33,291 bases of DNA, taken from positions 1 to 33,291 of the forward strand of contig NW_021832113.1 in the NCBI RefSeq assembly GCF_006345805.1. Reading direction: 5' to 3'. Numbering within the stretch: position 1 is the stretch's first letter; each line of letters starts with the position of its first letter. A program made the translations under genes and the position numbers. The notes under the pieces are model-generated. The model searched no databases. It was not told the DNA's origin and saw nothing but the letters and a program-made list of their open reading frames with translations. Shown one piece after another: positions 1 through 26,589 of this stretch. Origin of the DNA: Octopus sinensis (lineage: Eukaryota).

Positions 1-1430
1 AAAGTCACGATAGAGTTAATATTGTCTTCTGGAAGAGGGAACTATAATTTATTTCTTTAGGTGTAAACTCGTGAGTTAATAAGATAGTTGTTTGTTTTTC
101 TACTAAGATCTTTCGTAAGTTTTCTGATAGGTTATTCTTGATGTTGTTATGTAGCCAGATGTCTGTCGTAATATGTTGTATTTTCTGGGGCTGTGTACCC
201 TGAATGTCTCTGAATTCTAATTAAATATTAACTCTGTATAAGAATATTCATCATGAACTTAATTTTATTAAATGTTAAATTTGGTATTGAACCGTGAACA
301 TCTGTTTGCATTTAAACAAATTATTGGTGTTTATACAAAATATACAAACGGAAATTGAATATAACTTGAATACACAAATCCTTCTTTGTAACTATATATA
401 ATATACACTTATTACATTGTTTGAACAGCATTTACCATCCATATAGTCATTCTTTTTCTCACTCTTGTTAGATTTTAGATGATATTAATGCTAAAAGAGG
501 CACAGTTTTCCGAGTGTTTCACCATTTGGTCTTGATTGTTGCGTTCAAATTATTTAATGAAAGATAGTCATTGTTATTTGACCAGGAAATGAATTAATCA
601 TTAGTATTTGGCAGTGGACTTGGTTATATCTTTCTTCGTTTGCTCATGGAACTACCATAATATTAGCTGTGCTGAGACACAGTCATATTCATAGTAATGA
701 AGGCTATATGTTCTTTACTCAGATTATATACAATCTATATTGATATCTAGTATTGCACCGTCAAGCACAGTGCCATTGTATCACATATATACCCAATTAT
801 CATGATAATTAATAAGCTATAATTCATTAACTCTCTTACAGTTGTATGTCTGAATTGTAAACTGATTTTGTCATAGGGACATCGTGTACCATCACATTAC
901 ATTTTATATCTTGTTAGGGATCATGTTGGGGAAGGGTGTATGGAATTTGGCTTGTGGAGATGATTTTTAGGGGACAGATTGTGTGCGGGGTGGAGGGTAT
1001 GCACATAAAGGACATGTCTTTATGGGCTCAGTTTCACTTAATTAGAGAGGAATTCTAGAGATGAGAGGACAGTGCCATGCCATAGATTTGGCACAGTTAT
1101 AAGAAAAGAAAGACAAAGCCAAGGGAAAACTGTTATCAAGTTTTAATTAAATGAGATAATTGCAACATTGTTAGAATATTTAATGTGTTTTTAGAGAGAG
1201 AGAGGGAGAGGGTGGATTTAGAAATGTTAGTCTGTTTTATTGTGGACATATTGAGCTATTACATGGGACCACTGTAGAAAGTACAGAAATATTGACCAAA
1301 ACCATAATGGTCAACATTTGACCAGTAACGACAGGAATTGAATGTCTCACAATAACAAGGTAGTGTTTAATAAAAATAAAGATAAAGGAAGTTTATTTTT
1401 AAGTGTAAAACTTGGAAATATTTATTTCAG

Positions 1431-1508
1431 GGGCTCCAGAGTTTGAGGACAGATGTGTACAAACGGAGGCTACATGTCAGGAATTAGGGGCTGCATCTCA
1501 AGCAATAG
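1431..1508 (+). CDS. Repeat exon R1, 78 nt, phase 1-1: (G)APEFEDRCVQTEATCQELGAASQAI
   Basis: tttatttcag|GGGCTCC...GCAATAG|gtgagt; only the phase-1 frame is open. Confidence 0.75.
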
Positions 1509-4500
1509 GTGAGTATAAAATAATAGTTCCTAATTGATTTCTGTAAGGTTTTCTTCCCCCGAGTATATTGTGCTTGAAAAAATAACTGAAAACAGCTTCC
1601 ATTCCCCTTTTCCAATTGAACGATTATCCGTATAATAATTGAATTAAAGATATCGATTTGCTGAGAGTTTATGAAATACTCATTGAGGTTAATGCTGTTG
1701 GTAATAATGTTCAAATTAGAAGACACAATAGAGTTAATATTGTCATTTGGTGACGGAACGCATCATCATCATCATAATCATCATCATCGTTTAACGTCCG
1801 TTTTCATTGTAGCATGGGTTGGACGATTTCACTGGCAAGGCAGTAGGCTGCGCCAGGCTCCAATGTGATCTGGCAAGGTTTCCACATATGTATGCCATTC
1901 CTAACCACTTCGAGAGTGTGGTGGGTGCTTTTTACGTGCCACCGACACAGGAGCCAGTTGAAGTGGGAGCTGGTATTGACCACGTTCGGATGGTACTTTT
2001 TACATGCCAACGGCACAGGGAACCAGTCAGGCGGCACTGGGCACAAACAACGCTTGAATGTTACGTAATACGTGCCACCGGCACGGTTGCCAGTGAGGCG
2101 GCACTGGCATCGGCCATAATTACAATTTGCATTTTGATTTCGATCTTGATTTGATTTTGATTCGTGATTTCTGGTTTTTGGTTTTACTTGATTCAGAAAT
2201 TCTTCTCAAGCGCAACTTATCACTCTGTGATTCAAGGGCACTTTTAAAAGGGGCTGGTTATGCGACACTGGTATAGGCTACAGCTTTGATCTCACTTCAC
2301 TTGCCGGGTCTTCTCAATCACATCATATTTACAGAGGTCTCTGTCTCTTGCCATTACCTCTGTGAGGCCCAACGTTCGAAGGTCGTTTCACCACGTCATC
2401 CCCTGTCTTCCTGGGTCAGCCCTTTCCACGGATTCCTTCCACTGTGAGGGTGTAACACTTCTTCCCACAGCTCTCCTCATCCATACACATGACCATACCA
2501 GTGCAGTTGTCTCTCTTGTACACCACATCTGATACTTATTATGTCTAACACTTCTCTCAGGCCTCTTCACTCTGCATTGTGTGCACACTGACATCATTGG
2601 GTTCAAATTATTTAATAGAATATGGTCATTGTTATTTGACCAGGAAATGAATTAAGCATTAGTATTTGACAGTGGACTTGGTTATATCTTTCTTCGTTTG
2701 CTCATGGAACTACCATAATATTAGCTGTGCTGAGACACAATCATATTCATTGTAATGAAGGTTATACGTTCTTTACTCATATTATATACAATCTATATTA
2801 ATATCTAGTATTGCACCGTCAAGCACAGTGCCATTGTATTACATATATACCTAATTATCATGATAATTAATAAGCTATAATTCATTAACTCTCTTACAAT
2901 TGTATGTCTGAAATGTAAACTTATTTTGTCATAGCATCATCCTGTACCCTCACTTAACATTTTTCACCTTGTTAGGGATCATGTGGGGGAAGGGTATATG
3001 GAATTTGGCTTGTGGAGATGTCTTGTAGGGGACAGATTGTGTGCGGGGTGGAGAGTATGCACATAGAGGACATGTTTTATGGGCTCAGTTTCACTTAATT
3101 AGAGAGGAATGTTGATTAGTGAATTCTAGAGATGAGAGGACAGTGCCATGCCATGGATTTGGTAGTTATAAGAAAAGAAAGACAAAGTCAAGAGAAAACT
3201 CTTATCAAGTGTTAATTAAATGAGATAATTGGTACATTGTTAGAATATTCAATGTGTTCTTAGAGAGATAGATAGAGAGAGAGAGAGAGCGGGTGGATTT
3301 AGAAATGTTAGTCTGTTTTATTGTGGACATATTGTGCTATTACATGAGACCACTGTAGAAAGTACAGAAATATTGACCAAAACCATAATGGTCAACATTT
3401 GACCAGTAACGACAGGAATTGAATGTCTCACAATAACAAGGTAGTGCTTAATAAAAATAAAGATAAAGAAAGTTTATTTTTAAATGTAAAACTTGGAAAT
3501 ATTTATTTCAGGGGCTCCAGAGTTTGAGGACAGGTGTGTACAAACGGAGGCTACATGTCAGGAATTAGGGGCTGCATCTCAAGCAATAGGTGAGTATAAA
3601 ATAATAGTTCCCAATTGATTTCTGTAAGATTTTCTTCCCCCGAGTATATTGTGCTTGAAAGAATAACTGAAAAAAGCTTCCATTCCTATTTTCCAATTGA
3701 ACGATTATCCGTATAGTAATTGAATTAAAGATATCGATTTACTGAGAGTTTATGAAATTCCCATTGAGGTTAATGCTGTTGGTAATAATGTTCAAATTAG
3801 AAGACACAATAGAGTTAATATTGTCATTTGGTGACGGAACGCATCATCATCATCATAATCATCATCATCGTTTAACGTCCGTCTTCATAGTAGCATGGGT
3901 CGGACGAATTCACTGGCAAGGCAGTAGGCTGCGCCAGGCTCCAATGTGATCTGGCAAGGTTTCCACATATGTATGCCATTCCTAACGCCAACCACTCCGA
4001 GAGTGTGGTGGGTGCTTTTTACGTGCCACCCACACAGGAGCCAGTTGAAGTGGGGGCTGGTATTGACCACGTTCGGATGGTGCTTTTTACGTGCCAATGG
4101 CACAGGGAACCAGTCAGGCGGCACTGGCCACAAACAACGTTTGAATGTTACTTATTACATGCCATCGGCACGGTTGTCAGCGAGGCGGCACTGGCATCGG
4201 CCATAATTACAATTTGCATTTTGATTTCGATCTTGATTTGATTTTGATTTGTGATTTCTGGTTTTTGGTTTTACTTGACTCAGAAATTCTTCTCAAGTGC
4301 AACTTATCACTCTGTGATTCAAGGGTACTTTTAAAAGGGGCTGGTTATGCGACACTGGTATAGGCTACAGCTTTGATCTCACTTCACTTGCCGGGTCTTC
4401 TCAATCACATCATATTTACAGAGGTCTCTGTCTCTTGCCATTACCTCTGTGAGGCCCAACGTTCGAAGGTCGCTTCACCACGTCATCCCCTGTCTTCCTG

Positions 4501-7500
4501 GGTCACCTCACTTCCACGGGTTCCTTCCACTGTGAGGGTGTAACACTTCTTCCCACAGCTCTCCTCATCCATACACATGACCATACCAGTGCAGTTGTCT
4601 CTCTTGTACACCACATCTGATGCTTCTTATGTCTAACACTTCTCTCAGGCCTCTTCACTCTGCATTGTGTGCACACTGACATCATTGGGTTCAAATTATT
4701 TAATAGAATATGGTCATTGTTATTTGACCAGGAAATGAATTAAGCATTAGTATTTGGCAGTGGACTTGGTTATATCTTTCTTCATTTGCTCATGGAACTA
4801 CCATAATATTAGCTGTGCTGAGACACAATCATATTCATTGTAATGAAGGTTATACGTTCTTTACTCAGATTATATACAATCTATATTGATATCTAGTATT
4901 GCACTGTCAAGCACAGTGCCGTTATATCACATATATACCCAATTATCATGATAATTAATAAGCTATAATTCATTAACTCCCTTACATTTGTATGTATGAA
5001 ATGTAAACGTATTTTGACATAGCATCATCGTGTACCCTCACTTAACATTTTTCACCTTGTTAGGGATCATGTTGGGGAAGGGTATATGGAATTTGGCTTG
5101 TGGAGATGTTTTTTAGGGGACAGATTGTGTGCGGGGTGGAGAGTATGCACATAAAGGACATGTCTTTATGGGCTCAGTTTCACTTAATTAGAGAGGAATT
5201 CTAGAGATGAGAGGACAGTGCCATGCCATAGATTTGGCACAGTTATAAGAAAAGAAAGACAAAGCCAAGGGAAAACTGTTATCAAGTGTTAATTAAATGA
5301 GATAATTGGTACATTGTTAGAATATTTAATGTATTCTTAGAGAGAGAGAGAGAACGAGAGAGAGGGAGGGTGGATTTAGAAATGTTAGTCTGTTTTATTG
5401 TGGACATATTGGGCTATTACATGAGACCACTGTAAAAAGTACAGAAATATTGACCAAAACCATAATGGTCAACATTTGACCAGTAACGACAGGAATTGAA
5501 TGACTCACAATAACAAGGTAGAGTTTAATAAAAATAAAGATAAAGAAAGTTTATTTTTAAATGTAAAACTTGGAAATATTTATTTCAGGGGCTCCAGAGT
5601 TTGAGGACAGGTGTGTACAAACGGAGGCTACATGTCAGGAATTAGGGGCTGCATCTCAAGCAATAGGTGAGTATAAAATAATAGTTCCCAATTGATTTCT
5701 GTAAGGTTTTCTTCCCCTGAGTATATTGTGCTTGAAAGAATAACTGAAAATAGCTTCCATTCCTATTTTCCAATTGAACGATTATCCGTATAGTAATTGA
5801 ATTAAAGATATCGATTTACTGAGGGTTTATGAAATTCCCATTGAGGTTAATGCTGTTGGTAATAATGTTCAAATTAGAAGACACAATAGAGTTAATATTG
5901 TCATTTGGTGACGGAACGCATCATCACCATCATAATTATCATCATCGTTTAACGTTCGTTTTCATAGTAGCATGGGTTGGACGATTTCACTGGCAAGGCA
6001 GTAGGCTGCGCCAGGCTCCAATGTGATCTGGCAAGGTTTCCACATATGTATGCCATTCCTAACGCCAACCACTTCGAGAGTGTGGTGGGTGCTTTTTACG
6101 TGCCACCGACACAGGAGCCAGTTGAAGTGGGAGCTGGTATTGACCACGTTCGGATGGTACTTTTTACATGCCAACGGCACAGGGAACCAGTCAGGCGGCA
6201 CTGGGCACAAACAACGCTTGAATGTTACGTAATACGTGCCACCGGCACGGTTGTCAGTGAGGCGGCACTGGCATCGGCCATAATTACAATTTGCATTTTG
6301 ATTTCGATCTTGATTTGATTTTGATTCGTGATTTCTGGTTTTTGGTTTTACTTGATTCAGAAATTCTTCTCAAGCGCAACTTATCACTCTGTGATTCAAG
6401 GCACTTTTAAAAGGGGCTGGTTATGCGACACTGGTATAGGCTACAGCTTTGATCTCACTTCACTTGCCGGGTCTTCTCAATCACATCATATTTACAGAGG
6501 TCTCTGTCTCTTGCCATTACCTCTGTGGGCCCAACGTTCGAAGGTCGTTTCACCACGTCATCCCCTGTCTTCCTGGGTCAGCCCTTTCCACGGATTCCTT
6601 CCACTGTGAGGGTGTAACACTTCTTCCCACAGCTCTCCTCATCCATACACATGACCATACCAGTGCAGTTGTCTCTCTTGTACACCACATCTGATACTTA
6701 TTATGTCTAACACTTCTCTCAGGCCTCTTCACTCTGCATTGTGTGCACACTGACATCGTTGGGTTCAAATTATTTAATAGAATATGGTCATTGTTATTTG
6801 ACCAGGAAATGAATTAAGCATTAGTATTTGGCAGTGGACTTGGTTATATCTTTCTTCGTTTGCTCATGGAACTACCATAATATTAGCTGTGCTGAGACAC
6901 AATCATATTCATTGTAATGAAGGTTATACGTTCTTTACTCAGATTATATACAATCTATATTGATATCTAGTATTGCACCGTCAGGCACAGTGACATTGTA
7001 TCACATATATACCTAATTATCATGATAATTAATAAGCTATAATTCATTAACTCTCTTACATTTGTATGTCTGAAATGTAAACTTATTTTGTCATAGCATC
7101 ATCCTGTACCCTCACTTAACATTTTTCACCTTGTTAGTGATCATGTGGGGGAAGGGTATATGGAATTTGGCTTGTGGAGATGTTTTGTAGGGGACAGATT
7201 GTGTGCGGGGTGGAGGGTATGCACATAGAGGACATGTTTTATGGGCTCAGTTTCACTTAATTAGAGAGGTATGTTGATTAGTGAATTCTAGAGATGAGAG
7301 GACAGTGCCATGCCATGGATTTGGTAGTTATAAGAAAAGAAAGACAAAGTCAAGAGAAAACTCTTATCAAGTGTTAATTAAATGAGATAATTGGTACATT
7401 GTTAGAATATTTAATGTGTTCTTAGAGAGATAGATAGAGAGAGCGAGAGAGCGGGTGGATTTAGAAATGTTAGCCTGTTTTATTGTGGACATATTGGGCT

Positions 7501-10500
7501 ATTACATGAGACCACTGTAGAAAGTACAGAAATATTGACCAAAACCATAATGGTCAACATTTGACCAGTAACGACAGGAATTGAATGTCTCACAATAACA
7601 AGGTAGTGCTTAATAAAAATAAAGATAAAGAAAGTTTATTTTTAAATGTAAAACTTGGAAATATTTATTTCAGGGGCTCCAGAGTTTGAGGACAGGTGTG
7701 TACAAACGGAGGCTACATGTCAGGAATTAGGGGCTGCATCTCAAGCAATAGGTGAGTATAAAATAATAGTTCCCAATTGATTTCTGTAAGGTTTTCTTCC
7801 CCCGAGTATATTGTGCTTGAAAGAATAACTGAAAATAGCTTCCATTCCTATTTTCCAATTGAACGATTATCCGTATAGTAATTGAATTAAAGATATCGAT
7901 TTACTGAGGGTTTATGAAATTCCCATTGAGGTTAATGCTGTTGGTAATAATGTTCAAATTAGAAGACACAATAGAGTTAATATTGTCATTTGGTGACGGA
8001 ACGCATCATCATCATCGTTTAACGTCCGTCTTCATAGTAGCATGAGTCGGACGAATTCAATGGCAAGGCAGTAGGCTGCGCCAGGCTCCAATGTGATCTG
8101 GCAAGGTTTCCACATATGAATGCCATTCCTAACGCCAACCACTTCGAGAGTGTGGTGGGTGCTTTTTACGTGCCAACAGCACAGGGAACCAGTCAGGCGG
8201 CACTGGCCACAAACAACGTTTGAATGTTACTTATTACGTGCCACCGGCACGGGTGCCAGCCAGGCGGCACTGGCATCGGCCATAATTACAATTTGCATTT
8301 TGATTTCGATCTTCATTTGATTTTGATTTGTGATTTCTGGTTTTTGGTTTTACTTGATTCAGAAATTCTTCTCAAGCGCAACTTATCACTCTGTGATTCA
8401 AGGGTACTTTTAAAAGGGGCTGGTTATGCGACACTGGTATAGGCTACAGCTTTGATCTCACTTCACTTGCCGGGTCTTCTCAATCACATCATATTTACAG
8501 AGGTCTCTGTCTCTTGCCATTACCTCTGTGAGGCCCAACGTTCGAAGTCATTTCATTTCACCACGTCATCCCCTGTCTTCCTGGGTCACCCCTTTCCACG
8601 GATTCCTTCCACTGTGAGGGTGTAACACTTCTTCCCACAGCTCTCCTCATCCATACACATGACCATACCAGTGCAGTTGTCTCTCTTGTACACACACATC
8701 TGATACTTATTATGTCTAACACTTCTCTCTCAGGCCTCTTCACTCTGCATTGTGTGCACACTGACATCGTTGGGTTCAAATTATTTAATAGAATATGGTC
8801 ATTGTTATTTGACCAGGAAATGAATTAAGCATTAGTATTTGATAGTGGACTTGGTTATATCTTTCTTCGTTTGCTCATGGAACTACCATAATATTAGCTG
8901 TGCTGAGACACAATCATATTCATTGTAATGAAGGTTATATGTTCTTTACTCAGATTATATAGAATCTATATTGATATCTAGTATTGCACTGTCAAGCACA
9001 GTGCCATTGTATTACATATATACCTAATTATCATGATAATTAATAAGCTATAATTCATTAACTCTCTTACATTTGTATGTATGAAATGTAAACTTATTTT
9101 GTCATAGCATCATCCTGTACCCTCACTTAACATTTTTCACCTTGTTAGGGATCATGTGGGGGAAGGGTATATGGAATTTGGCTTGTGGAGATGTTTTGTA
9201 GGGGACAGATTGTGTGCGGGGTGGAGGGTATGCACATAGAGGACATGTTTTATGGGCTCAGTTTCACTTAATTAGAGAGGTATGTTGATTAGTGAATTCT
9301 AGAGATGAGAGGACAGTGCCATGCCATAGATTTGGTAGTTATAAGAAAAGAAAGACAAAGTCAAGAGAAAACTCTTATCAAGTGTTAATTAAATGAGATA
9401 ATTGGTACAATGTTAGAATATTTAATGTGTTCTTAGAGAGATAGATAGAGAGAGAGAGAGAGCGGGTGGATTTAGAAATGTTAGCCTGTTTTATTGTGGA
9501 CATATTGGGCTATTACATGAGACCACTGTAGAAAGTACAGAAATATTGACCAAAACCATAATGGTCAACATTTGACCAGTAACGACAGGAATTGAATGTC
9601 TCACAATAACAAGGTAGTGCTTAATAAAGATAAAGAAAGTTTATTTTTAAATGTAAAACTTGGAAATATTTATTTCAGGGGCTCCAGAGTTTGAGGACAG
9701 GTGTGTACAAACGGAGGCTACATGTCAGGAATTAGGGGCTGCATCTCAAGCAATAGGTGAGTATAAAATAATAGTTCCCAATTGATTTCTGTAAGGTTTT
9801 CTTCCCCCGAGTATATTGTGCTTGAAAGAATAACTGAAAACAGCTTCCATTCCTATTTTCCAATTGAACGATTATCCGTATAGTAATTGAATTAAAGATA
9901 TCGATTTACTGAGAGTTTATGAAATTCCCATTGAGGTTAATGCTGTTGGTAATAATGTTCAAATTAGAAGACACAATAGAGTTAATATTGTCATTTGGTG
10001 ACGGAACGCATCATCATCATCATAATCATCATCATCGGTTAACGTCCGTCTTCATAGTAGCATGGGTCGGACGAATTCACTGGCAAGGCAGTAGGCTGCA
10101 CCAGGCTCCAATGTGATCTGGCAAGGTTTCCACATATGTATGCCATTCCTAACGCCAACCACTCCGAGAGTGTGGTGGGTGCTGTTTACGTGCCACCGAC
10201 ACAGGAGCCAGTTGAAGTGGGGGCTGGTATTGACCACGTTCGGATGGTGCTTTTTACGTGCCAACAGCACAGGGAACCAGTCAGGCGGCACTGGCCACAA
10301 ACAACGTTTGAATGTTACTTATTACGTGCCACTGGCACGGGTGCCAGCCAGGCGGCACTGGCATCGGCCGTAATTGCAATTTGCATTTTGATTTCGATCT
10401 TCATTTGATTTTGATTTGTGATTTCTGGTTTTTGGTTTTACTTGATTCAGAAATTCTTCTCAAGCGCAACTTATCACTCTGTGATTCAAGGGTACTTTTA

Positions 10501-13500
10501 AAAAGGGCTGGTTATGTGACACTGGTATAGGCTACAGCTTTGATCTCACTTCACTTGCCGGGTCTTCTCAATCACATCATATATACAGAGGTCTCTGTCT
10601 CTTGCCATTACCTCTGTGAGGCCCAACGTTCGAAGGTCGTTTCACCACGTCATCCCCTGTCTTCCTGGGTCACCCCTTTCCACGGATTCCTTCCACTGTG
10701 AGGGGGTAACACTTCTTCCCACAGCTCTCCTCATCCATACACATGACCATACCAGTGCAGTTGTCTCTCTTGTACACCACATCTGATACTTATTATGTCT
10801 AACACTTCTCTCAGGCCTCTTCACTCTGCATTGTGTGCACACTGACATCGTTGGGTTCAAATTATTTAATAGAATATGGTCATTGTTATTTGACCAGGAA
10901 ATGAATTAATCATTAGTATTTGACAGTGGACTTGGTTATATCTTTCTTCGTTTGCTCATGGAACTACCATAATATTAGCTGTGCTGAGACACAATCATAT
11001 TCATTGTAATGAAGGTTATATGTTCTTTACTCAGATTATATAGAATCTATATTGATATCTAGTATTGCACTGTCAGGCACAGTGACATTGTATCACATAT
11101 ATACCCAATTATCATGATAATTAATAAGCTATAATTCATTAACTCTCTTAGATTTGTATGTCTGAAATGTAAACTTATTTTGTCATAGGAACATCATGTA
11201 CCCTCACCTTACATTTTATATTTTGTTAGGGATCATGTTGGGGAAGGATGTGTGCAATTTGGCTTGTGGAGATGTTTTTTAGGGGACAGATTGTGTGCGG
11301 AGTGGAGGGTATGCACATAAAGGACATCTTTATGGGCTCAGTTTTACTTAATTAGAGAGTTGATTAGTGAACTCTAGAGATGAGAGGACTGTGCCATGCC
11401 ATGGATTTGGTAGTTATAAGAAAAGAAAGACAAAGCTAAGAGAAAACTGTTATCAAGTGTTAATTAAATGAGATAATTGCAACATTGTTAGAATATTTAA
11501 TGTGTTTTTAGAGAGAGAGAGAGAGAGGAGGGGAGGGTGGATTCAGGAATGCTAGTCTGTTTTATTGTGGACATATTGGGCTATTACATGGGACCACTGT
11601 AGAAAGTACAGAAATATTGACCAAAACCATAATGGTCAACATTTGACCAGTAACGACAGAAATTGAATGTCTCACAATAACAAGATAGAGTTTAATAAAA
11701 ATAAAGATAAAGAAAGTTTATTTTTAAATGTAAAACTTGGAAATATTTATTTCAGAGGCTCCAAAGTTTGAGGACAGGCGTGTAAAAACAGAGGCTACAT
11801 GTCAGGAATTAGGGGCTGCATCTCAGGTAATAGGTGAGTATAAAATAATAGTTCCCAATTGATTTCTGTAAGGTTTTCTTCCCCCGAGTATATTGTGCTT
11901 GAAAGAATAACTGAAAACAGCTTCCATTCCTATTTTCTAATTGAACGATTATCTGTATAATAATTGAATTAAAGATATCGATTTACTGTGAGTTTATGAA
12001 ATACCCATTGAGGTTAGCACTGTTGGTAATAATGTTCAAATTAGAAGACACAATAGAGTAAATTTTGTCATTTGGTCACAAGTATAATCAAGTATAATCT
12101 TGGAAATATTTATTTCAGCAAGGCCAATATTTGAAGACAAAGAGGTCCAGACAGTAGAAGAGCCACGTGCTGAGTATAGAATGACATTACATAATTGATT
12201 TCTATAAAGTTTAGCTTTTACTGAGCTATTTTGGTCAATAGAATGACCGAGAACAGATACCACTGCTACATTTTATTTGAATGCTTAGCTATAAAGAAAT
12301 TCTGTTCTTCTACAACAACATGAATATCCAATAAATGTACTTTATGCAAACATCTGTTACTCATTCACTCGCAGAAAGAAAGATACAAACATTAAATATA
12401 AACCCTGAAACGGTTCTCTCCCGTTAAGGAGAATATTCGCCCTGTTTGTCATCTCATTGTACTCATTCATTCTCTCTCTCTCACTCATGCTCTTTCTCTC
12501 CGTCTTTTCAAGAAAGATGCTGGTTAAAAGTTTCAATACAATAAATGATATCATCTTCATCTTTTCTCATCTGCTCTCCATGCTCCCATACACTAGGTGG
12601 GTCATCACTGTCCAAGTCAGTTGTATCTGAAATTACTGCCAACCGTCATTTGTTGAGGAAAACATCTCACTTAAACATTGCAGCTTTTCTAAGGTGGTAG
12701 ACCCTTTCTAACCCCAACCACTTTATAAAGGGTCCTGGGTATATTTTATTGTTGCACAAGCATTAGAAATGATCATCAATTCCCCAACAATATCAAACGT
12801 TCCTTTCAAACTTGTGGTGTCATCTTTCCTAGTTTCCACCAACCACTTCCTAGTGTGTTCTGGGAGCATTTAATTATAGCACAAGTAGTAATCAAGTTGT
12901 GTTACATTCTATATAATTAGACGGTCCTCACTATTCTATGATGTTTTGGTTCACTGAAGCTGATGACATTTTCAGGAGGTGAGAAGGGAATGTGATGACA
13001 AAAGTATCAGGATGCGGGGAGAGAAATTTGCAATACCCCCTCTCCTGGCTGTGGGGTCTTTGTCTTACATGTCTTTTGGCTAAATATGCCAGTACTTGTG
13101 CTTTATAAAAAGGGGCCACGTACACTTTGTGAGGTGGTTGGCATCAGTAAGAGCATCCTACAGTAGAAAACCATGCAAAAGAAACCATCTGGGGCCTGGT
13201 GCAGTTGTCTGGCTTGTCAGATCCTGTCAAGATTTCCAACCCATTCCAGCTTGGAAAACAAATTTTGAATATTGATGATGAGGATGATGATGCTGTCTTC
13301 CAGTAACTCATCATAATTCTTTGTCTTAGATTGTTACAGTAGTTTCCTGTCTGGTATAACATATTAGCTCAGTATAATAATATTGATTGTGAAAACCGGT
13401 TCAGTGATTTTGATAACATTCATATTGAACAGAGAACATATGTTCACATTTGAACAAAACATTGATGCTAGCATATGCAATACATGGAAAGGAATGAACG

Positions 13501-16500
13501 TATGAGATTCCAGTGTGACTTGAACTTACAACACTTTTCTAACTATATATATATAATTATCGCTTGTTACGATGTTTGTATAACGTTTACTGTCCATATA
13601 TAGACATCGTTATACTGAAAATTGTTGGCTTTGAGATGGTTTCAATTGTAAGAGAGTCACTGTTTTCAGTCTTCCACATTTTGGTTTTACTTCCGACTTG
13701 ATTGTTCTGTTGAAATTAGATCATGGAACCTGGTCATTGTTATTTGACCAAGAAAAGAATTCATCATTAGTATTCAGTACTGGAAATGGTTACATTTTTC
13801 TATGGTTTCTCATGGAACTACCATAATATCAACTGTGCTGAGACACAACCATATTAATTGTAACAAATGTCACATGTTCTTCACACAGATTTTATACAAT
13901 CTATATTGATAGTTAGTGTTTATACGCTGCATTAACATGATAATTAATCAGCTATCATCCATTAACTCTCTTAAACTTGTCTGTCTGAAAGTTTCATAGC
14001 ATTATCTTGTACCCTCATCTAATATTTTACACCTTATTACCCTCAAAGTAAACATAACTTTTACATGGGTACACAACCACATCCCTACGAACTAGTTTTA
14101 CAGCTGTATGCCCTTCCCACAATAATAAAGTGTTGATTATCAATAACTATAATGAAATTATACTATAAAACGTAAAGCTTGAAAATATTCATTTCAAAGA
14201 CTCCAACTTCTGTGAAGGATGCCTTAACAACATCACAGCCAGTTGGTGAGTAGCAAATAACAGTACCTCATGGATTTCTATAAATTTAACCTTCACCTGA
14301 GCATTAGTAGTTTATCAGAATGACTGAGGACAAGATCCATTCCTAATTTACATCTGAAATATTAACTGTAAAATAATTCTATTAGACATTTTGATATCAA
14401 TGAAATTTCACAAAATATCCAACGGGGATGGCATGGTTTGGAAAATAGATAATTTAGAAGACAATAGAATTAATACTGTATCTTAAAACGGAAGACTAAA
14501 ATATGTAGTTACTAAGTTTACTGATAGGTTATTGCTGTTGTTGCTATTTTGGCAAATATCTCTCATAATGTGACAGATTTACAATGAAATGTGTTCCTTG
14601 TGTGAACACCCTGCCTTTTTTTTTTGACTGATAATAAATTTATCATTGCATCCCCTAAACATTGTCTTTATCCATGTAAAAGTATTAGGTTTGATGTTGA
14701 GACAACCGTCCTCTCTCTCTCTCTCTCCAAGATAGACACTGATGACCCTCATCATTTATCATCTGATGTCTATGCTCCTATCGATTGGATGGATGATTCC
14801 TATCCATGTCAGTTCTTATTAACAAATACTGTCCGCCTCGATTGGATGAGGAACACATTCCGGCTTTTCTATGGTGATGTGCCTTTCCTAACATCAACCA
14901 CTTTAAAAGGGCCTTGGGCACAATTTTGCTCCAAAAGCACTAGAAAAATTGTCGTCAACAAAATTAAACGCTCCTCTTTAACTTCTACAAGGAAATTCTG
15001 TTTGCAGATACTGAGAACAGAAAGCTAAAATACAATAAAGATGAACTGGATGGATATATGCTGGAGATCCAAAGCAAAAGCAGTGATTCCCATTCATAGA
15101 CAGTTTGAAATGTCCATTGAAACCAGCAATCAAATACCGATTGATTAGTTCAGACTAATTTCAACCTTGAATATAAATGGCGAGATTTACAAGGTTGTAT
15201 TCACAAAGAGATCAACTGTAAATCTACAGAATAATGAATATGGGACTAAAAGTATCTTGAAGACTGGAATCCTCTGGCATTCCAGGCTGTGTGGAACATG
15301 TGTCTTAAATCTTGGATGTGATACAAGACGGAAAGAAGAATAAAAGGGATTGAATGTTGTGTGATTTGATCTGGTTTATGGTTCTCTAGCAAACAAATTG
15401 TTGATGGAAGCAGTGGACCTGTTTTATATATGAGAAAAGATTAAGGATCTGATGAGGAGCTGCTATAACAATTTCAATATGCAGTTCATGAGGAAAACTT
15501 TCTCGATAGACTGGTATCATTTTGAAACGGGAATTGCTGTAGTTTCTACAAAATCAGTCATTTGGTTTGTGATTGTTATGGAGATGTTACTTAAATCAGC
15601 AGATTGATAAGAAATGGCTCAAAGGAAAACACTCGAGAAGACATTAATGGATTACATAACAATAGTAACAACAAATAAAAGGATATGCAAATAGTTCTGG
15701 ATTAACTGGGTAGACTGAGGAACTTGGTGAAGAATGTGCTTCAATGCAAATGGGTAATGAAGCCCGTCATTTGTGAAAGGTCAGCAGAAACAAGTGAAGG
15801 TCAAAATAGCAGGAGAAACCCTGATGAAGTTTAAAGGGAAACTTGAAAAACTATTACGACGATGGTAAACTACCTAATTTTGCAATAATAGTAAAGGCAT
15901 TGAGATCATGTCACAGAACGAAGATGGGTTAAAAGAAATAAATATGCCAAACATTCTGGAAAATAAAAGATTTGGAGCTCGCACTTTGTATTCCCGTCTT
16001 TCTTATATATTTTTGAGTATCAGTCCTTTTGTACCATTTCAGATGTCTTCACTGCATTAATGTGTAGATGTCCAGTTGTATGTAGTTAATGGGGTTTTGT
16101 ACAAGTGTGCAGTGTTTTAGGACACCTGATATCACTTTTTGTTTCATCTGTGGAGAACTGATCATTGCTCACCTTTATTAAGGAGTCTTAAAATATTCCC
16201 TGCATCTGATAATGACCTGGTGATCTGGGATGTAGGATGATAAAATTCACGATTTTCCAACAGCAAAGAGAACTGGTATTACGTTTATTTTACTTGAAGT
16301 GGTGTGTCATGCATTTGTGACGAGATCTTTGGAGACCACATTGGATGATATTGCACTTTAGCAGAAGATGAGGAGAATGGTGGTTAGTGAAGTCTAGAGT
16401 TTAGAGGACAGTCGCATGTCATAGATTTGGTTCAGATATATGAAAGGAGAGAGAGAACTATGAGAAGAAACAGTCTCATGAAATGATAATTAAATGAAAT

Positions 16501-18573
16501 AATTGCAACATTGTTAGATTATGTAGGATGTCTCTGTTAAAGAGAAATAAAGTTTCGGAAAGTTAGTCTATTTTGTTGCAGGCCTAAATATTGAGCTATT
16601 ACCTGGTCCCACAATGGAAAGTATAAAAATACTGAGCAAAACCCTAGTGGTCACCAGCCAGCCAACCACTGATGATAATAAATGTCCCACAACAATAAAC
16701 TACAGAATATTTATAGAGATAAATTATAAAACTTGGAAATATTTATTTCAGAGAGTCCAGTTCTGAAGGAGAGGGATCTTCTGAGAGTGGCTAAGAGGTT
16801 AGGACGTGATTGGTGGCAAGTGGGTGAGTATATTTGATTTCTATATATTTTACTTTCACCTGATCTATTTTATTTGTCAGAATGAATGAGAACAAGTTAC
16901 ATTCCTCATTTCCCATTGATAGGTTATCTGTATGACAATTTTATTTACGATATTCCTGATATTTCATAAAATATCCACTGAGGTTAGCATGGTTAGTAAT
17001 AATGGATAAACTAGAAAATAGAAATGGCGTTTAATATTATCTTTTGGAAGAAGGAACTAAAATATATTGTTTAAGGGTAAACAGATGAGTGAATTTGTTT
17101 TACATTTTCTTTAGGTTCACTGTTAGGTTATTGTAATGAAGGACAAGTACCAAAGTTAACATCTAAAACAAAGCATCTTTCTTCAAACAGAAGACTTTGA
17201 GTTTGGTTCTTCTTGCAGCCATTATTTATTGGGTTATTGTGTTGGAAGCTGATAATTCCAATTTAGATTGTCATTTTGTAATGACTTTACCACATGACAT
17301 ATGTCTGTAAATGCTTCAATAAAAAGAGATTTAATAAAGGTGACACAGCGAAATCCTATCATTCTCCTCAGGCGAAAACAGAGAATTCCTTTAAGGGAAT
17401 TTACCAGAAAATGAACTGGAGGTGGCATCTCTCATTGAGACTGACATAATAATAACTGAATAGGCTCTGTAGAATTGATTGAACCTGGAGTTCATTGGAG
17501 AAGTTTGAAATGGGTTGAATTTGACTTAGAATTATCGACTGTTGGACAATCACTGATCATTCGATTTTTAGTGTCCTCTTGGGAACTTTGCAAGGTAGTA
17601 GATGGCACAGAGGGACAGTACTTTCATGACCCTTTGAATACCAGGTCTGAAATCTACCAGAATAAGACAGATATATGGGATTCCTCTAAAGGGTCTTTGG
17701 AGTAATGTTACTCAATAGGATTTATAGTTCAGAGATCTGGGAGTCTCTCCAGGTTGAGCCACGTCTCCTCCACATCTGTGGTACCTCGGACATGTGATCA
17801 GGGTGTTGCAGGAATGAATTACAGGACATGTTCTCAAAGTCAAACCAATGGAACAGGATACCGAGGGGGAGGCCAAGAAAGAAATGGTTGGATGATATCC
17901 ATAGTCTTAGTTCTTCACATCATAGAATACAAGCAGAATGTCTAATGATGGATGCTTCTGATAGGACCCTATGGAGGAGGTGCCTGAGGACTCTTTCCCC
18001 ACAGCCCTTTCAAGAATATTGAGCAGAGGAAATGGATGGATCATATGCTTTCACTGTTGGAGGTCAATGTTAATTCTTGAGGTTCTGATATACTTTTGCC
18101 TTCACAAAAGTTTTCCTGCCCTCGTTTACCATATATTTTCTCAAGTATAATTTTCAATTAATTTTCTTTAAAAATCTCGTTTAATTCAAACTCTTTGTTA
18201 TTTTTGTCAATAGAAAACAATGTCTTATATTTTTCCTGTTTCTTAGCTATTTCTTTTTTGATTTCTCTAATGATAAAGTTTGTTTGTTATATTCATAACA
18301 ACCTACAGTACACAGCGTTTTATGTTATTGTCAGTGTTGTTGCATTTATTTCTTATTGTTGTGTCTTTTGCAGCTATTTTTTTAGGAGTTGATACAACTG
18401 AACTGAAAATTGATGATGAGTCTATTGACACTGTAAAACAAGGCTACCTGATGCTTCGCGAATGGTTCAAAAATTGCGACCCAGAAACACGGACACACGC
18501 AACATTAAGTGCAGCTCTTGAAGAAGCTGAATGTTTCACTGCGATGGAATGTCTGTCATTAGACGCAAAGTGA
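1431..18573 (+). CDS. 5'-partial multi-exon gene: tandem 26-aa repeat linker followed by a C-terminal death domain (gene start lies upstream of the window)
   Basis: Canonical AG/GT exons, all phase 1, join in frame. The last two give ESPVLKERDLLRVAKRLGRDWWQVAIFLGVDTTELKIDDESIDTVKQGYLMLREWFKNCDPETRTHATLSAALEEAECFTAMECLSLDAK*, which fits the death-domain pattern (VA..LG.DW..A..LG, Y.ML..W, T...L..AL). Which repeat exons are actually included is not known. Confidence 0.82.
1761..2601 (-). mobile_element. 5'-truncated RTE-type LINE (ORF C-terminus + 3'UTR + (GAT)n tail), copy 1
   Basis: The minus strand carries a degenerate C-terminus (IRCGVQER..WYGHV..VEG..G.G.PRKT) like the more intact copy at 29150-29425; the (CAT)n on + is the tail. 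Confidence 0.85.
3512..3589 (+). CDS. Repeat exon R2, same peptide as R1
   Basis: Same splice sites; differs from R1 only by a synonymous AGA>AGG. Confidence 0.75.
3842..4689 (-). mobile_element. RTE fragment copy 2 (amplified with the unit)
   Basis: Same junctions as copy 1. Confidence 0.85.
5589..5666 (+). CDS. Repeat exon R3, same peptide as R1
   Basis: tttatttcag| and |gtgagt; identical to R2. Confidence 0.75.
5919..6763 (-). mobile_element. RTE fragment copy 3
   Basis: Same junctions; shares diagnostic variants with copy 1. Confidence 0.85.
7674..7751 (+). CDS. Repeat exon R4, same peptide as R1
   Basis: tttatttcag| and |gtgagt; identical to R2. Confidence 0.75.
8004..8774 (-). mobile_element. 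RTE fragment copy 4 with internal 68-bp deletion
   Basis: Same junctions; lacks one 68-bp sub-repeat and has a shorter (CAT)n. Confidence 0.85.
9679..9756 (+). CDS. Repeat exon R5, same peptide as R1
   Basis: tttatttcag| and |gtgagt; identical to R2. Confidence 0.75.
10009..10855 (-). mobile_element. RTE fragment copy 5
   Basis: Same junctions as copies 1-4. Confidence 0.85.
11756..11833 (+). CDS. Repeat exon R6 (diverged): (E)APKFEDRRVKTEATCQELGAASQVI
   Basis: Canonical sites and 78 nt long, with several non-synonymous changes (VQT>VKT); has a new internal CAG|GTAATA donor-like site after 11826. Confidence 0.7.
12119..12166 (+). CDS. Older repeat exon R7: (A)RPIFEDKEVQTVEEP; ancestral donor lost
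   Basis: Intact cttggaaatatttatttcag acceptor. The homologous donor at 12170 reads ctgagt instead of gtgagt. An in-frame GT at 12167 would give a 48-nt phase 1-1 exon. Confidence 0.45.
13136..13292 (+). mobile_element. Old RTE/SINE-family 3' end with (GAT)n tail
   Basis: ggttggcatcagtaagagcatcc...ccaacccattccagcttggaaaac...gatgatgaggatgatgatg is a diverged sense copy of the same 3' end. Confidence 0.7.
13420..14560 (+). repeat. Diverged paralogue of the intron-exon unit (contains R8)
   Basis: Collinear with 280-910 and with the exon flanks; for example 13809-13847 matches 643-681 at 37/39. Confidence 0.9.
14198..14245 (+). pseudogene. Older repeat exon R8: TPTSVKDALTTSQPV; ancestral acceptor mutated (AG>AA)
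   Basis: cttgaaaatattcatttcaa|AGACTCC...CAGTTG|gtgagt lies in a paralogous intron unit; an alternative AG at 14198-14199 gives a 46-nt exon that starts in phase 0. Confidence 0.45.
15010..15868 (+). mobile_element. Degenerate non-LTR reverse transcriptase remnant (R2-group, Hero/NeSL-like, tentative)
   Basis: Frameshifted motifs FRLISTLN, GIPGCVEH, LNVV*FDL.YGS, WYHFETGIA...SVIWFVIVMEMLL, LMDYITIVT. Confidence 0.8.
16380..17095 (+). repeat. Diverged paralogue of the intron-exon unit surrounding death-domain exon 1
   Basis: Collinear with the R-exon flanks (ttagtgaa.tctagag, aattaaatga.ataatt, identical cttggaaatatttatttcag, ctgaggttagca, ggaagaaggaacta). Confidence 0.9.
16752..16823 (+). 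CDS. Death-domain exon 1: (E)SPVLKERDLLRVAKRLGRDWWQV
   Basis: tttatttcag| and |gtgagt, 72 nt, phase 1-1; carries the death-domain N-terminal motif VA..LG.DW. Confidence 0.85.
17690..18015 (+). mobile_element. RTE (Expander/Rex3-like) LINE 3' fragment
   Basis: LQVEPRLLHI, WYLGHVIR, PRGRPRKKWLDDI...DRTLWRRCLRTLSPQP across frameshifts. Confidence 0.7.
18374..18573 (+). CDS. Death-domain exon 2 (terminal coding exon) ending in TGA
   Basis: gtgtcttttgcag|CT ATT TTT TTA GGA; in frame with the previous exon; matches the 3' part of ORF 18280..18573. Confidence 0.88.
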
Positions 18574-21274: not shown

Positions 21275-21282
21275 CATATATG

Positions 21283-21331
<49 letters not shown>

Positions 21332-21364
21332 TATGTATATATATAATATATATATATATGTATG

Positions 21365-21395
<31 letters not shown>

Positions 21396-21455
21396 GTATG
21401 TATGTATATATTATGTATGTATATATATATATATGATATATATATATATTATATG

Positions 21456-21494
<39 letters not shown>

Positions 21495-21594
21495 TATATA
21501 TATATATCTTTAATATATATATATATGTATATATATCTTATATATATATATGTATATGTATATATATATCTTTATATATATATATATATATGTA

Positions 21595-21629
<35 letters not shown>

Positions 21630-21730
21630 ATATATATATGTATATATATATATATATATGTATATATATGTATGTATGTATATATATATGTATGTATATA
21701 TATATGTATGTATGTATATATATATGTATG

Positions 21731-21792
<62 letters not shown>

Positions 21793-22190
21793 GTATATAT
21801 ATCTTTATATATATGTATATGTATATATATCTTTATATATATGTATATGTATATATATCTTTATATATATATATGTATATGTATATATATCTTATATATA
21901 TATATATATGTATATATATCTTTATATTATATATATATATATATGTATATATATATTATATATATATATATATATGTATATATATGTATATATATCTTTA
22001 TATATATATATATGTATATATATCTTTATATATATATATATGTATATATATCTTTATATATATATATATGTATATATATCTTTATATATATATATATATC
22101 TATATATATATATATACCTTTATATATGTCTATATCTATCATTATATATATCTATATCTATCTATCTTTATATATATATATATATATATA
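21275..22190. repeat. ~0.9 kb complex (AT)-rich microsatellite with higher-order atatgtatatgtatatatatcttt-like units
   Basis: Direct reading; source of spurious IY-rich ORFs. Confidence 0.95.

Positions 22191-23776: not shown

Positions 23777-23778
<2 letters not shown>
22191..23778 (-). mobile_element. RTE-family 3'UTR with (GAT)n tail, expanded by nested tandem repeats (~62, ~330, ~35 bp)
   Basis: (CAT)n-ttaacgtccgc...ctggatgcccttcctaacgccaacc; repeated atgtgccaccgacacaggtgccaga and cttgcctcaacaggtcttcacaagtgtca blocks. Confidence 0.85.
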
Positions 23779-23835
<57 letters not shown>

Positions 23836-26327: not shown

Positions 26328-26566
26328 GGAGACGCAATGGCCCAGTGGTTAGGGCAGCGGACTCGCGGTTTCGATCCCCAGACCAGACGGAAACTGAAAG
26401 AAGCCTGTCGTATATGTATATGTATATGTGTGTGTCTGTGTTTGTCCCCCCAACATCGCTTGACAACTGATGCTGGTATGTTTACGTCCCCGAACTCACA
26501 ACGTAACGACAAACGAAATACCGCAAAGCATTTCGCCCGGCGTGCTAACGATTCTGCCAGTTCGCC
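26328..26566. mobile_element. Chimeric SINE cluster: tRNA-like head (+), body of a second SINE (+), inverted head of a third SINE (-, 26492-26566)
   Basis: gcaatggcccagtggttaggg...ggtttcgatccc; ggaaactgaaagaagcc; antisense ggcgaactggcagaatcgttagcacgccggg. Confidence 0.7.
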
Positions 26567-26589
26567 ACAAATCTGTAAACTCTGTTGTT

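What the first reader, a model, noticed from the sequence alone, without database searches (positions are those of the whole stretch)
16380..17095. The linker exons appear to be neofunctionalised duplicates of the first death-domain exon
Seen: several hundred bases on both sides of death-domain exon 1 are collinear with the flanks of R1-R8, including an identical 20-nt acceptor (cttggaaatatttatttcag) shared with R1-R7. The peptides retain traces of shared ancestry (SPVLKERDLLRVAKR--LG vs APEFEDRCVQTEATCQELG). Inference: since the death domain is ancient and needs this exon, the exon unit was serially duplicated upstream, and the copies lost the fold and gained a short linear motif. That would be a traceable case of a folded-domain exon becoming a motif-repeat linker.
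Basis: partly seen in the sequence, partly recalled or inferred. Interest (0 to 1): 0.8.

Follow-up and report, generated by a model that had tools for sequence, protein, structure and literature searches.

The report
Death-domain exon copies became linker
In an octopus gene for an ankyrin–RING–death-domain protein, the small repeated "linker" exons are diverged tandem copies of the first death-domain exon. They now encode a floppy, variable-length spacer, which makes this a neat but not revolutionary example of a folded-domain piece turning into disordered sequence.

Summary
Window 16375-17100 (first death-domain exon, DD1, plus about 375 nt upstream and 275 nt downstream) is collinear with the units around R1-R6. 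BLAST gives 65-66% identity over 700-760 nt (E 1e-37 to 1e-51). R7 and R8 match only partly. The 20-nt acceptor is exact in 8 copies.

The exon bodies are homologous too. In the same codon register they are 47-61% identical, against 27-32% for codon shuffles. All exons are phase 1/1.

The flanks are not a dispersed repeat in the sample I could read. Across about 218 kb from eight Octopus loci, they occur only between the RING exon and DD1.

The gene belongs to an Octopus-only ankyrin-RING-linker-death-domain family that NCBI names "MIB2-like".

The duplication is old. It predates the O. bimaculoides / O. sinensis-vulgaris split and the spread of the paralogs. One O. bimaculoides paralog keeps a full-length 72-nt copy. 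R1-R6 are a recent re-amplification of one already diverged unit, with 6 copies here and 2 in a near-identical O. sinensis locus.

The linkers are predicted disordered, evolve about as fast as their introns, and are included or skipped in annotated isoforms. Some are dead (R7 donor, R8 acceptor). "Neofunctionalised" and "gained a motif" are not shown.

The parts
10..80 (+). Tail of the downstream flank of a further linker unit (R0) that lies just upstream of the window
   Evidence: It matches DD1 downstream flank positions 208-271 at 80%. The R0 exon is seen in the near-identical locus L005 at 14099-14149.
1050..1760 (+). R1 unit: upstream flank 1050-1430, exon 1431-1508 (78 nt, APEFEDRCVQTEATCQELGAASQAI), downstream flank 1509-1760
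3107..3841 (+). R2 unit, exon 3512-3589
5196..5918 (+). R3 unit, exon 5589-5666
7271..8003 (+). R4 unit, exon 7674-7751
9282..10008 (+). R5 unit, exon 9679-9756
11354..12101 (+). R6 unit, exon 11756-11833 (APKFEDRRVKTEATCQELGAASQVI)
   Evidence: The peptide is identical to the two R exons of L005 and of protein P0003.
12099..12306 (+). R7 unit: exact acceptor 12099-12118, 51-nt-class exon 12119-12169 (RPIFEDKEVQTVEEPR), partial downstream flank 12171-12306. The homologous donor reads CT instead of GT. An in-phase GT lies 3 nt upstream.
   Evidence: The paralog L001 has GT at this site.
14115..14510 (+). R8 unit: short upstream flank, acceptor with AG changed to AA, 48-nt exon 14198-14245 (TPTSVKDALTTSQPV), downstream flank 14246-14510. 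Probably a dead pseudo-exon in this gene.
   Evidence: A related exon is used in O. bimaculoides protein P0054.
16375..17100 (+). DD1 unit, the finding itself: upstream flank 16375-16751, acceptor 16732-16751, death-domain exon 1 at 16752-16823 (72 nt, SPVLKERDLLRVAKRLGRDWWQV), downstream flank 16824-17100
18374..18573 (+). Death-domain exon 2 (AIFLGVDTTEL...SLDAK, stop codon 18571-18573), the last coding exon
   Evidence: The acceptor was chosen to match annotated relatives, which read WWQV-AIFLG. The Pfam Death score rises from 14.7 to 22.4 bits with this splice.
535..12079 (+). Tandem array of six units of about 2.08 kb, 94-96% identical. Each unit holds a spacer, the exon unit and two repeat fragments, for example 1765-2019 and 2250-2559.
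   Evidence: The near-identical locus L005 has only two units.

Best explanation
The window holds the 3' half of a gene of an Octopus-only family with the layout ankyrin repeats, cIAP-like RING, linker, death domain. NCBI names these proteins "MIB2-like". The death domain is split into two exons.

Exon 1 (72 nt) lies between two phase-1 introns. At some point it was duplicated in tandem together with about 0.4 kb of upstream and at least 0.27 kb of downstream intron. Because the exon length is a multiple of three and both introns are phase 1, any number of copies between the RING exon and the death domain splices in frame.

The copy next to exon 2 kept its death-domain role (Pfam positions 4-23, the first helix). 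The upstream copies were released from the fold and diverged into several forms:
- a full-length 72-nt form, still present in an O. bimaculoides paralog;
- a 78-nt form, which is R1-R6 here;
- a 51-nt form that lost the last seven codons (GRDWWQV), which includes R7 and R0;
- a 48-nt form, which is R8.

Together they encode a predicted disordered, acidic spacer between RING and death domain.

The first duplications are old. They happened before the O. bimaculoides / O. sinensis-vulgaris split and before the paralogs spread. Later, single units were re-amplified locally by unequal recombination of about 2-kb segments, which gave R1-R6 here: 6 copies against 2 in a near-identical locus. Individual copies die (R7 donor, R8 acceptor, exon-less relics). 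Annotated isoforms include or skip them.

Shown: homology of the units, their age, restriction to this gene interval in the sampled DNA, loss of predicted structure, and the copy-number difference.

Inferred: the direction of copying, the unequal-crossover mechanism, and the role as a tolerated spacer of variable length rather than a selected motif carrier.
For: - Flank collinearity: E down to 1e-51.
- Acceptor: exact in 8 units. The donor-proximal intron (GTGAGTATAAAATAA.AGTTCCTAATTGATTTCT, which reads GEYKI.VPN*) is shared by DD1 and linker units in other loci.
- Exon bodies: 47-61% identical in register against a 27-32% null, p as low as 5e-5.
- Full-length intermediate: a 72-nt linker exon with the same flanks lies 2.6 kb upstream of DD1 in O. 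bimaculoides L006. It is 48-55% identical to DD1 exons, p <= 8e-5.
- Peptide traces: the O. bimaculoides linker NPNFEEKQRETMAKRVG compares with DD1 SQKLKEKDLLRVAKRLG.
- Location of flank copies: in 8 loci (about 218 kb) they lie only between the RING exon and DD1, on the gene strand. The exceptions are an inverted partial copy beside R0 in L001 and in L007.
- Age: DD1 flanks from different paralogs and species are 78-83% identical and form a clade (bootstrap 100% upstream, 83% downstream). DD1 versus linker flanks are 60-75% identical.
- DD1 is a true death-domain part: Pfam Death scores 22.4 bits with exon 1 and 13.2 without it. Relatives score 29-35 bits. The family profile hits PIDD, RIPK1 and ankyrin death domains at about 3e-8, starting at DD1.
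- Structure: AlphaFold2 gives pLDDT 26-41 for the linker and 80-90 for the death domain, with helix 223-244 encoded by DD1.
- Splicing: annotated isoforms occur with and without linkers. Examples are P0017 versus P0019, the set P0009 / P0012 / P0020, and a gene with isoforms numbered up to X22 whose 14 listed lengths step by 17 aa.
- Copy number: 6 units here against 2 in L005, which has zero mismatches to the window over 11266-14250. L007 has 2 units and L001 has none.
Against: - No outgroup with only the death-domain exon could be read. The family was found only in three Octopus species, so the ancestral state is inferred and not seen.
- A genome-wide check for flank copies was not possible. 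The sample is about 218 kb, and part of it is the same locus twice.
- Evidence that the exons are spliced in comes from annotated protein models (NCBI Gnomon and an O. vulgaris GenBank annotation), not from reads I examined.
- The exon-body similarity could be inflated a little by shared purine-rich splicing-enhancer content.
- The R8 exon body is not significantly similar to DD1.
- The window's death domain scores 22.4 bits, just under Pfam's 22.6-bit cut-off.
Confidence: 0.78

Rival explanations
1. The flank similarity comes from a dispersed repeat (transposon or SINE) that inserted repeatedly and was turned into exons. On this view the exon bodies are unrelated.
For: Each R1-R6 unit does carry repeat fragments that recur elsewhere in the window: 1765-2019 matches 22190-22450, and 2250-2559 matches 29115-29424. 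The octopus genome is repeat-rich.
Against: - Those fragments lie outside the 0.7-kb segment shared with DD1.
- The shared flanks occur in 8 loci only between the RING exon and DD1, on the gene strand, and bracket an exon or its relic.
- The ancient death-domain exon sits at exactly the same place inside the unit.
- The exon bodies are homologous in register.
- There is no Rfam or tRNA match.
Confidence: 0.04
2. Only the introns are related. Gene conversion or unequal exchange spread linker-type flanks around an unrelated death-domain exon, or the reverse.
For: There are signs of sequence exchange in this family:
- The acceptor is exact although the flanks are about 35% diverged.
- The linker-plus-death-domain module is far more alike among paralogs than the Ank and RING parts.
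- DD1 differs at 4 of 72 nt from an otherwise near-identical locus, and its peptide equals that of another paralog.
Against: - The exon bodies are significantly similar in the same codon register, including a full-length 72-nt copy.
- Flank identity is an even 60-75%, as old divergence would give, and not a recent conversion patch.
- DD1 flanks form their own clade across species.
Confidence: 0.05
3. One reading: the copies were kept by selection because they gained a new function, for example a repeated short linear motif that recruits a partner.
For: - The R1-type peptide core (EDRCVQTEATCQELGAASQAI) recurs nearly unchanged in many paralogs of two species.
- A 35-nt stretch of the exon is invariant in 9 copies.
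- Among R1-R5, 1 of 78 exon sites varies against 38 of 605 flank sites, p = 0.049.
- Different paralogs amplified different linker types independently.
- TCQE and TVEE fit the very loose TRAF-binding pattern [PSAT]x[QE]E. That is my own recollection and was not tested.
Against: - Across nine R1-type copies, exon and flank vary alike: 12 of 78 against 70 of 591, p = 0.36.
- Exon identities among the 51-nt linkers are 52-81%, overlapping the range of their flank identities (40-78%).
- Most changes are non-synonymous.
- R7, R8 and R0 have broken splice sites, and exon-less relics exist.
- The similarity among paralogs also holds for the introns (93-96%). It may therefore reflect recent exchange and not selection.
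- The only Pfam hit is below threshold (PCF11 RFEG repeat, 25.5 bits against a 43-bit cut-off).
Confidence: 0.2
4. The direction is reversed: DD exon 1 was recruited from a pre-existing linker exon.
For: None directly. Unrooted trees cannot give a direction.
Against: - DD1 matches the N-terminal positions of the Pfam Death model and of solved death domains from distant animals.
- Family members exist with no linker at all (P0016, P0051, P0094, P0095, P0114, P0125, P0129).
- The linkers look like degraded DD1. They are truncated and have lost the Trp core residues.
Confidence: 0.02

Closest known systems
Tandem exon duplication (Kondrashov & Koonin 2001 and Letunic et al. 2002, from my own knowledge; tandem duplicated exon substitution events, PMC9741552)
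   Same: An exon was duplicated in place with its intron flanks. The copies keep length class, phase and splice sites, and they are alternatively spliced.
   Different: The classic cases are mutually exclusive and both copies keep the same fold. Here the copies add up (0 to at least 6 in one transcript model). They encode only a fragment of a domain, have lost the fold, and serve at most as a spacer.
Arrays of small symmetric exons that encode disordered spacers, for example the titin PEVK exons (from my own knowledge, not tested here)
   Same: Runs of short in-frame cassette exons encode a disordered segment. Copy number varies and inclusion is differential.
   Different: The origin of these units can be traced to an exon of a folded domain in the same gene.
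MIB1 / MIB2 E3 ligases (the name NCBI gives these proteins)
   Same: Ankyrin repeats are followed by a C-terminal zf-C3HC4_3 RING. The best Foldseek hit of the model is the MIB1 ankyrin domain.
   Different: Pfam finds no MIB/HERC2, ZZ or REP domains in P0003, P0040 or P0059. The family has one RING and a C-terminal death domain that MIB proteins lack. The RING is closest to the cIAP and XIAP RINGs.
Death domains of PIDD, RIPK1 and ankyrin-2/3
   Same: The family profile matches these solved domains at E 3e-8 to 5e-6 over the whole domain, including the part encoded by DD1.
   Different: The domain context (Ank-RING-linker-DD) is not that of any of these proteins.

Membership tests
Tandem exon duplication | Neighbouring exons of one gene, on the same strand, with the same intron phases and lengths that are multiples of three | tested here: met
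   All units are on the + strand and phase 1/1. Lengths are 78, 51(48), 48 and 72 nt.
Tandem exon duplication | Sequence similarity of the exon bodies beyond chance | tested here: met
   47-61% against a 27-32% codon-shuffle null, p 5e-5 to 1e-3. R8 is not significant. The full-length O. bimaculoides copy gives p <= 8e-5.
Tandem exon duplication | Similarity extends into the flanking introns | tested here: met
   About 375 nt upstream and about 235-275 nt downstream, E down to 1e-51.
Mutually exclusive exon cluster | Exactly one exon of the cluster is present in each mRNA | tested here: not met
   Annotated proteins carry 0, 1, 2 or more linkers plus DD1. One isoform carries R7 without DD1 (P0020). 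This is annotation-level evidence only.
Dispersed repeat / exonised transposon | Copies lie in unrelated genomic contexts and in both orientations | tested here: not met
   In about 218 kb from 8 loci, the copies lie only between the RING exon and DD1. They are on the gene strand except for an inverted partial copy beside R0 in L001 and L007. A genome-wide test was not possible.
Dispersed repeat / exonised transposon | Transposon hallmarks: RT or transposase ORF, tRNA-derived head, terminal repeats | tested here: not met
   No Rfam or tRNA match in the window. No long ORF lies in the flanks. Terminal repeats and target-site duplications were not searched for specifically.
Death domain (Pfam PF00531) | Match to the family model at the curated threshold | tested here: inconclusive
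   The window's domain scores 22.4 bits against a 22.6-bit cut-off (E 1.4e-4). Paralogs P0040 and P0059 score 35.1 and 29.5 bits and pass. The family profile hits solved death domains at 3e-8.
Death domain (Pfam PF00531) | Six-helix bundle, with exon 1 contributing the first helices | tested here: inconclusive
   The AlphaFold2 model has confident helices at 223-244, 260-274, 282-291 and 295-302, with pLDDT 80-90. DSSP calls four helices, the first of which covers DD1. Foldseek on the whole model returned only ankyrin hits.
MIB1 / MIB2 | MIB/HERC2 domains, ZZ finger, and two or three C-terminal RINGs | tested here: not met
   Pfam finds only Ank, one zf-C3HC4_3 and Death in P0003, P0040 and P0059.
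Short-linear-motif repeat | A defined motif that matches a known binding consensus and is conserved under selection | tested here: inconclusive
   No curated family matches above threshold. Exon and flank variability are alike. Motif libraries and binding could not be tested with these tools.

The most novel reading that the evidence does not exclude
The cassette arrays derived from the death-domain exon are not just tolerated spacers. They would be a diversification module of an Octopus-specific, rapidly evolving family of Ank-RING-death-domain E3 ligases. Copy-number variation plus combinatorial splicing would tune or switch assembly of death-domain signalling complexes, for example in innate immunity. 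The splicing includes isoforms that swap the true first death-domain exon for a decayed copy and so disable the fold.
Probability: 0.1. Interest if true: 0.75.

Novelty: new variant of a known kind. Interest (0 to 1): 0.45.

Why it matters
How disordered linkers and repeats arise is usually untraceable. Here every step is still visible in living genomes:
- a full-length copy of a folded-domain exon;
- truncated copies;
- re-amplified arrays;
- dead copies and exon-less relics.

All of these sit in the same intron context. The case shows that a symmetric exon encoding part of a domain can seed an in-frame, expandable spacer. It also points to a large, undescribed Octopus-only Ank-RING-death-domain family whose "MIB2-like" name is misleading. 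It does not change any general principle, because tandem exon duplication is well known.

Tried and rejected
- My first splice model for death-domain exon 2 used the wrong AG (WWQV-GVDTT). Comparison with relatives corrected it to WWQV-AIFLG.
- The "L001" tables mixed L001 and L002, because both records were in one file. This was sorted out.
- The Pfam hit of the R array to the PCF11 RFEG repeat (25.5 bits against a 43-bit cut-off) is treated as noise from repetitiveness.
- Foldseek of the whole model against the PDB returned only ankyrin proteins and said nothing about the death domain.
- Look-ups of isoforms P0002 and P0004 failed, because only the longest product of a gene is on record.
- I searched for relatives outside Octopus with a single protein, a profile, and an exhaustive HMMER scan. 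RING-death-domain members turned up only in O. sinensis, O. vulgaris and O. bimaculoides. I checked species names for only 10 of the new hits. One was a more distant death-domain protein of Argonauta without the RING.
- Tests for purifying selection on the linker exons gave p = 0.049 for R1-R5 only and nothing for the wider set.
- Two literature searches found no description of this family or of this kind of exon fate.
- No Rfam family and no tRNA was found in the window.
Full report
**What is at the coordinates**

The + strand of the window carries the 3' part of a spliced animal gene. After each copy of the 20-mer CTTGGAAATATTTATTTCAG there is a short open frame that ends at a GTGAGT donor. 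The exons are:
- six 78-nt exons, R1-R6, at 1431, 3512, 5589, 7674, 9679 and 11756;
- a 51-nt-class exon, R7, at 12119;
- a 48-nt exon, R8, at 14198;
- a 72-nt exon, DD1, at 16752-16823;
- a terminal exon at 18374-18573.

All internal exons start with two bases that complete a codon and end with one base of the next, so all are phase 1/1. DD1 plus the terminal exon give ESPVLKERDLLRVAKRLGRDWWQV|AIFLGVDTTEL...SLDAK.

**Is it a death domain?**

This sequence matches Pfam Death at 22.4 bits (cut-off 22.6, E 1.4e-4) over profile positions 4-80. The terminal exon alone gives 13.2 bits over positions 24-80, so DD1 supplies positions 4-23. Paralogs pass the cut-off at 35.1 and 29.5 bits. A family profile hits the solved death domains of PIDD, RIPK1 and ankyrin-2/3 at about 3e-8, starting at the DD1-encoded residues.

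**The observation**

The acceptor 20-mer is exact in eight places (R1-R7 and DD1) and has three mismatches at R8, where AG has become AA. None is expected by chance.

Self-BLAST aligns 16375-17057 collinearly with each R1-R6 unit at 65-66% identity over 706-759 columns, E 1e-37 to 1e-51. A multiple alignment shows the exon at the same place between the two flanks.

R7 shares only the acceptor region and about 116-136 nt downstream. R8 shares about 80 nt upstream and about 240-265 nt downstream. The first 80 bases of the window are the tail of yet another unit, R0, that lies just upstream.

**Exon bodies**

I lined up the exons from the acceptor without gaps. The linker exons are 47-61% identical to DD1 exons from four loci. 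Shuffling the linker's codons gives 27-32% (p 5e-5 to 1e-3). R8 is the exception at 29%, which is not significant.

The 51-nt class corresponds to the first 51 nt of DD1. It lacks the last 21 nt, which encode GRDWWQV.

**What the gene is**

Protein searches return only Octopus proteins that NCBI names "E3 ubiquitin-protein ligase MIB2-like" and the like. Their layout is ankyrin repeats, one zf-C3HC4_3 RING, a variable linker, and a death domain.

They have no MIB/HERC2 or ZZ domains, so the name is misleading. The RING is closest to the cIAP and XIAP RINGs.

An exhaustive HMMER scan of 1.84 billion representatives found 126 proteins at E <= 1e-10. The ten new ones whose source I looked up were from O. 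sinensis and O. bimaculoides, plus one more distant Argonauta death-domain protein without the RING.

**Related loci**

L005 (O. sinensis chromosome CM016885.1) is the same locus, or a very recent copy of it. It has zero mismatches to window 11266-14250 and is 98.8% identical overall. It supplies the missing 5' part: two Ank exons, the RING exon, R0 (with a lost donor), only two R units, then R7, R8, DD1 and DD2.

Other paralogs were read from three species:
- O. sinensis: L001 and L002;
- O. vulgaris: L007;
- O. bimaculoides: L003, L004 and L006.

In every one of them the linker exons sit in units with the same upstream flank, acceptor, donor-proximal intron and downstream flank as that gene's DD1.

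**Not a dispersed repeat, as far as could be tested**

In about 218 kb from these eight loci, the flank sequences occur only between the RING exon and DD1. They are on the gene strand and bracket an exon or an exon-less relic (L003 near 34750 and near 26626). The only exception is an inverted partial copy beside R0 in L001 and L007.

The transposon-like pieces inside the 2.08-kb R units lie outside the segment shared with DD1. Rfam and tRNA scans are empty.

**Age and order of events**

DD1 flanks from the window, L001, L002 and O. bimaculoides L003 are 78-83% identical. They form a clade with bootstrap support of 100% (upstream) and 83% (downstream). DD1 versus any linker flank is 60-75%. The duplication therefore predates both the species split and the spread of the paralogs.

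O. bimaculoides L006 still has a full-length 72-nt copy (SLKMEENHFHSTAKILSVKQQQV) 2.6 kb upstream of its DD1 (IPELNKKDLLMVAKRLGGKWQRA). It is 48-55% identical to DD1 exons over all 69 in-frame bases (p <= 8e-5). Another O. bimaculoides linker reads NPNFEEKQRETMAKRVG, next to DD1 SQKLKEKDLLRVAKRLG.

R1-R6, by contrast, are 94-96% identical copies of one already diverged unit. The near-identical locus L005 has two of them. O. vulgaris L007 has two where O. sinensis L001 has none. Other paralogs have amplified other linker types: four copies of CPKSEEKAVQTVAES., and two to three copies of VNRTFEVKETQTLAEPV.

**What the linkers are now**

AlphaFold2 was run on P0003, the product of L005, with a 27-sequence family alignment. 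It gives pLDDT 26-41 and no secondary structure for residues 159-218, which are the two R exons. It gives pLDDT 80-90 for the death domain, whose first helix (223-244) is the DD1 product.

Annotated isoforms show the exons behaving as cassettes:
- RING to DD1 directly: P0012, P0016, P0019 and P0051;
- with one or more linkers: P0009, P0017, P0003 and P0005;
- with R7 but without DD1: P0020;
- ending in the retained intron after a linker (...GEYKIIVPN*): P0027, P0029, P0032 and P0034.

One gene has isoforms numbered up to X22, and the 14 listed differ in length by steps of 17 aa. This is evidence from gene models, not from reads.

**Is there selection on the linkers?**

The evidence is weak. 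Among R1-R5, 1 of 78 exon sites varies against 38 of 605 flank sites (p = 0.049). With R6 included the difference disappears. In nine R1-type copies from three loci, 12 of 78 exon sites vary against 70 of 591 flank sites (p = 0.36), and most exon changes are non-synonymous.

In this gene R7 has CT at the homologous donor and R8 has AA at the acceptor. P0003 indeed skips both.

No known motif family matches above threshold. I therefore read the linkers as tolerated, expandable, disordered spacer sequence. A selected motif remains possible but unshown.

**Verdict**

The claims of neofunctionalisation and motif gain are not supported by what could be tested.

This is a clear and unusually complete example of a known process, tandem exon duplication, with an uncommon outcome: a fragment of a folded domain becomes a disordered cassette array. 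It sits in an undescribed Octopus-only gene family.

Noticed in passing
window 535-12079 versus L005 14593-18241; L007 10958-13778 versus L001: The number of 2.08-kb R units differs between very close sequences. The window has six and the near-identical O. sinensis locus L005 has two. An O. vulgaris paralog has two where the similar O. sinensis paralog has none. This could be haplotype polymorphism, recent paralogy or assembly collapse.
   Followed up: partly
window 16726-16805 (DD1 exon 16752-16823): Against L005, which is otherwise almost identical, DD1 has 4 differences in 72 nt, 3 of them non-synonymous. The window's DD1 peptide equals that of paralog L001. This suggests gene conversion between paralogs or fast evolution of the first helix.
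   Followed up: partly
alignment A2 (family proteins); L007 versus window R units: The linker-plus-death-domain end of the proteins is about 90-95% identical among paralogs whose ankyrin and RING parts are only about 50-60% identical. The R-unit introns are also 93-96% identical between paralogs and species. The 3' module seems to evolve in concert or to be exchanged between genes.
   Followed up: no
proteins P0009, P0012, P0020 (locus L001): One gene has annotated isoforms with R7+DD1, with DD1 only, and with R7 only. The last lacks the first death-domain exon and should not fold as a death domain.
   Followed up: no
window 16560-16585, 16727-16751, 16824-16853, 16877-16906 (approximate): Several intronic blocks are conserved across all unit types and species: about -170 to -150 and -25 to -1 before the exon, and +1 to +30 and +54 to +83 after it. 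They may be splicing control elements.
   Followed up: partly
window 26464-26907 (+): An open frame matches the Pif1 helicase 2B domain (E 4.7e-8). The same domain is annotated downstream of the gene in L001. It is probably a Helitron-like or PIF1-like remnant.
   Followed up: partly
window 17272-18307; 17798-18019 (+); 29153-29458 (-); 2250-2559 and its copies in each R unit: A segment of about 1 kb in the death-domain intron is absent from paralog L001. It and two other places carry frames with the ...RGRPRK.W...D... tail that I recall from the ends of LINE reverse-transcriptase ORFs. Pfam gave no significant hit. One such fragment is part of every R unit.
   Followed up: partly
window 21276-22191, 22366-23780, 27401-28003, and other microsatellites: Downstream of the gene there is a 0.9-kb (AT)n tract and tandem repeats of 63, 380 and 184 bp. 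The 63-bp repeat is related to a fragment inside each R unit (1765-2019).
   Followed up: no
L001 11018-11178 and L007 8859-8986: An inverted partial copy of the first 120 nt or so of the unit's upstream flank lies directly before the R0 unit in two paralogs.
   Followed up: no
window 1431-11833 (R array product): The R-array peptide gives a sub-threshold Pfam hit to the Pcf11 RFEG repeat (25.5 bits against a cut-off of 43). It is probably an effect of the repeated FED/FEG periodicity.
   Followed up: no
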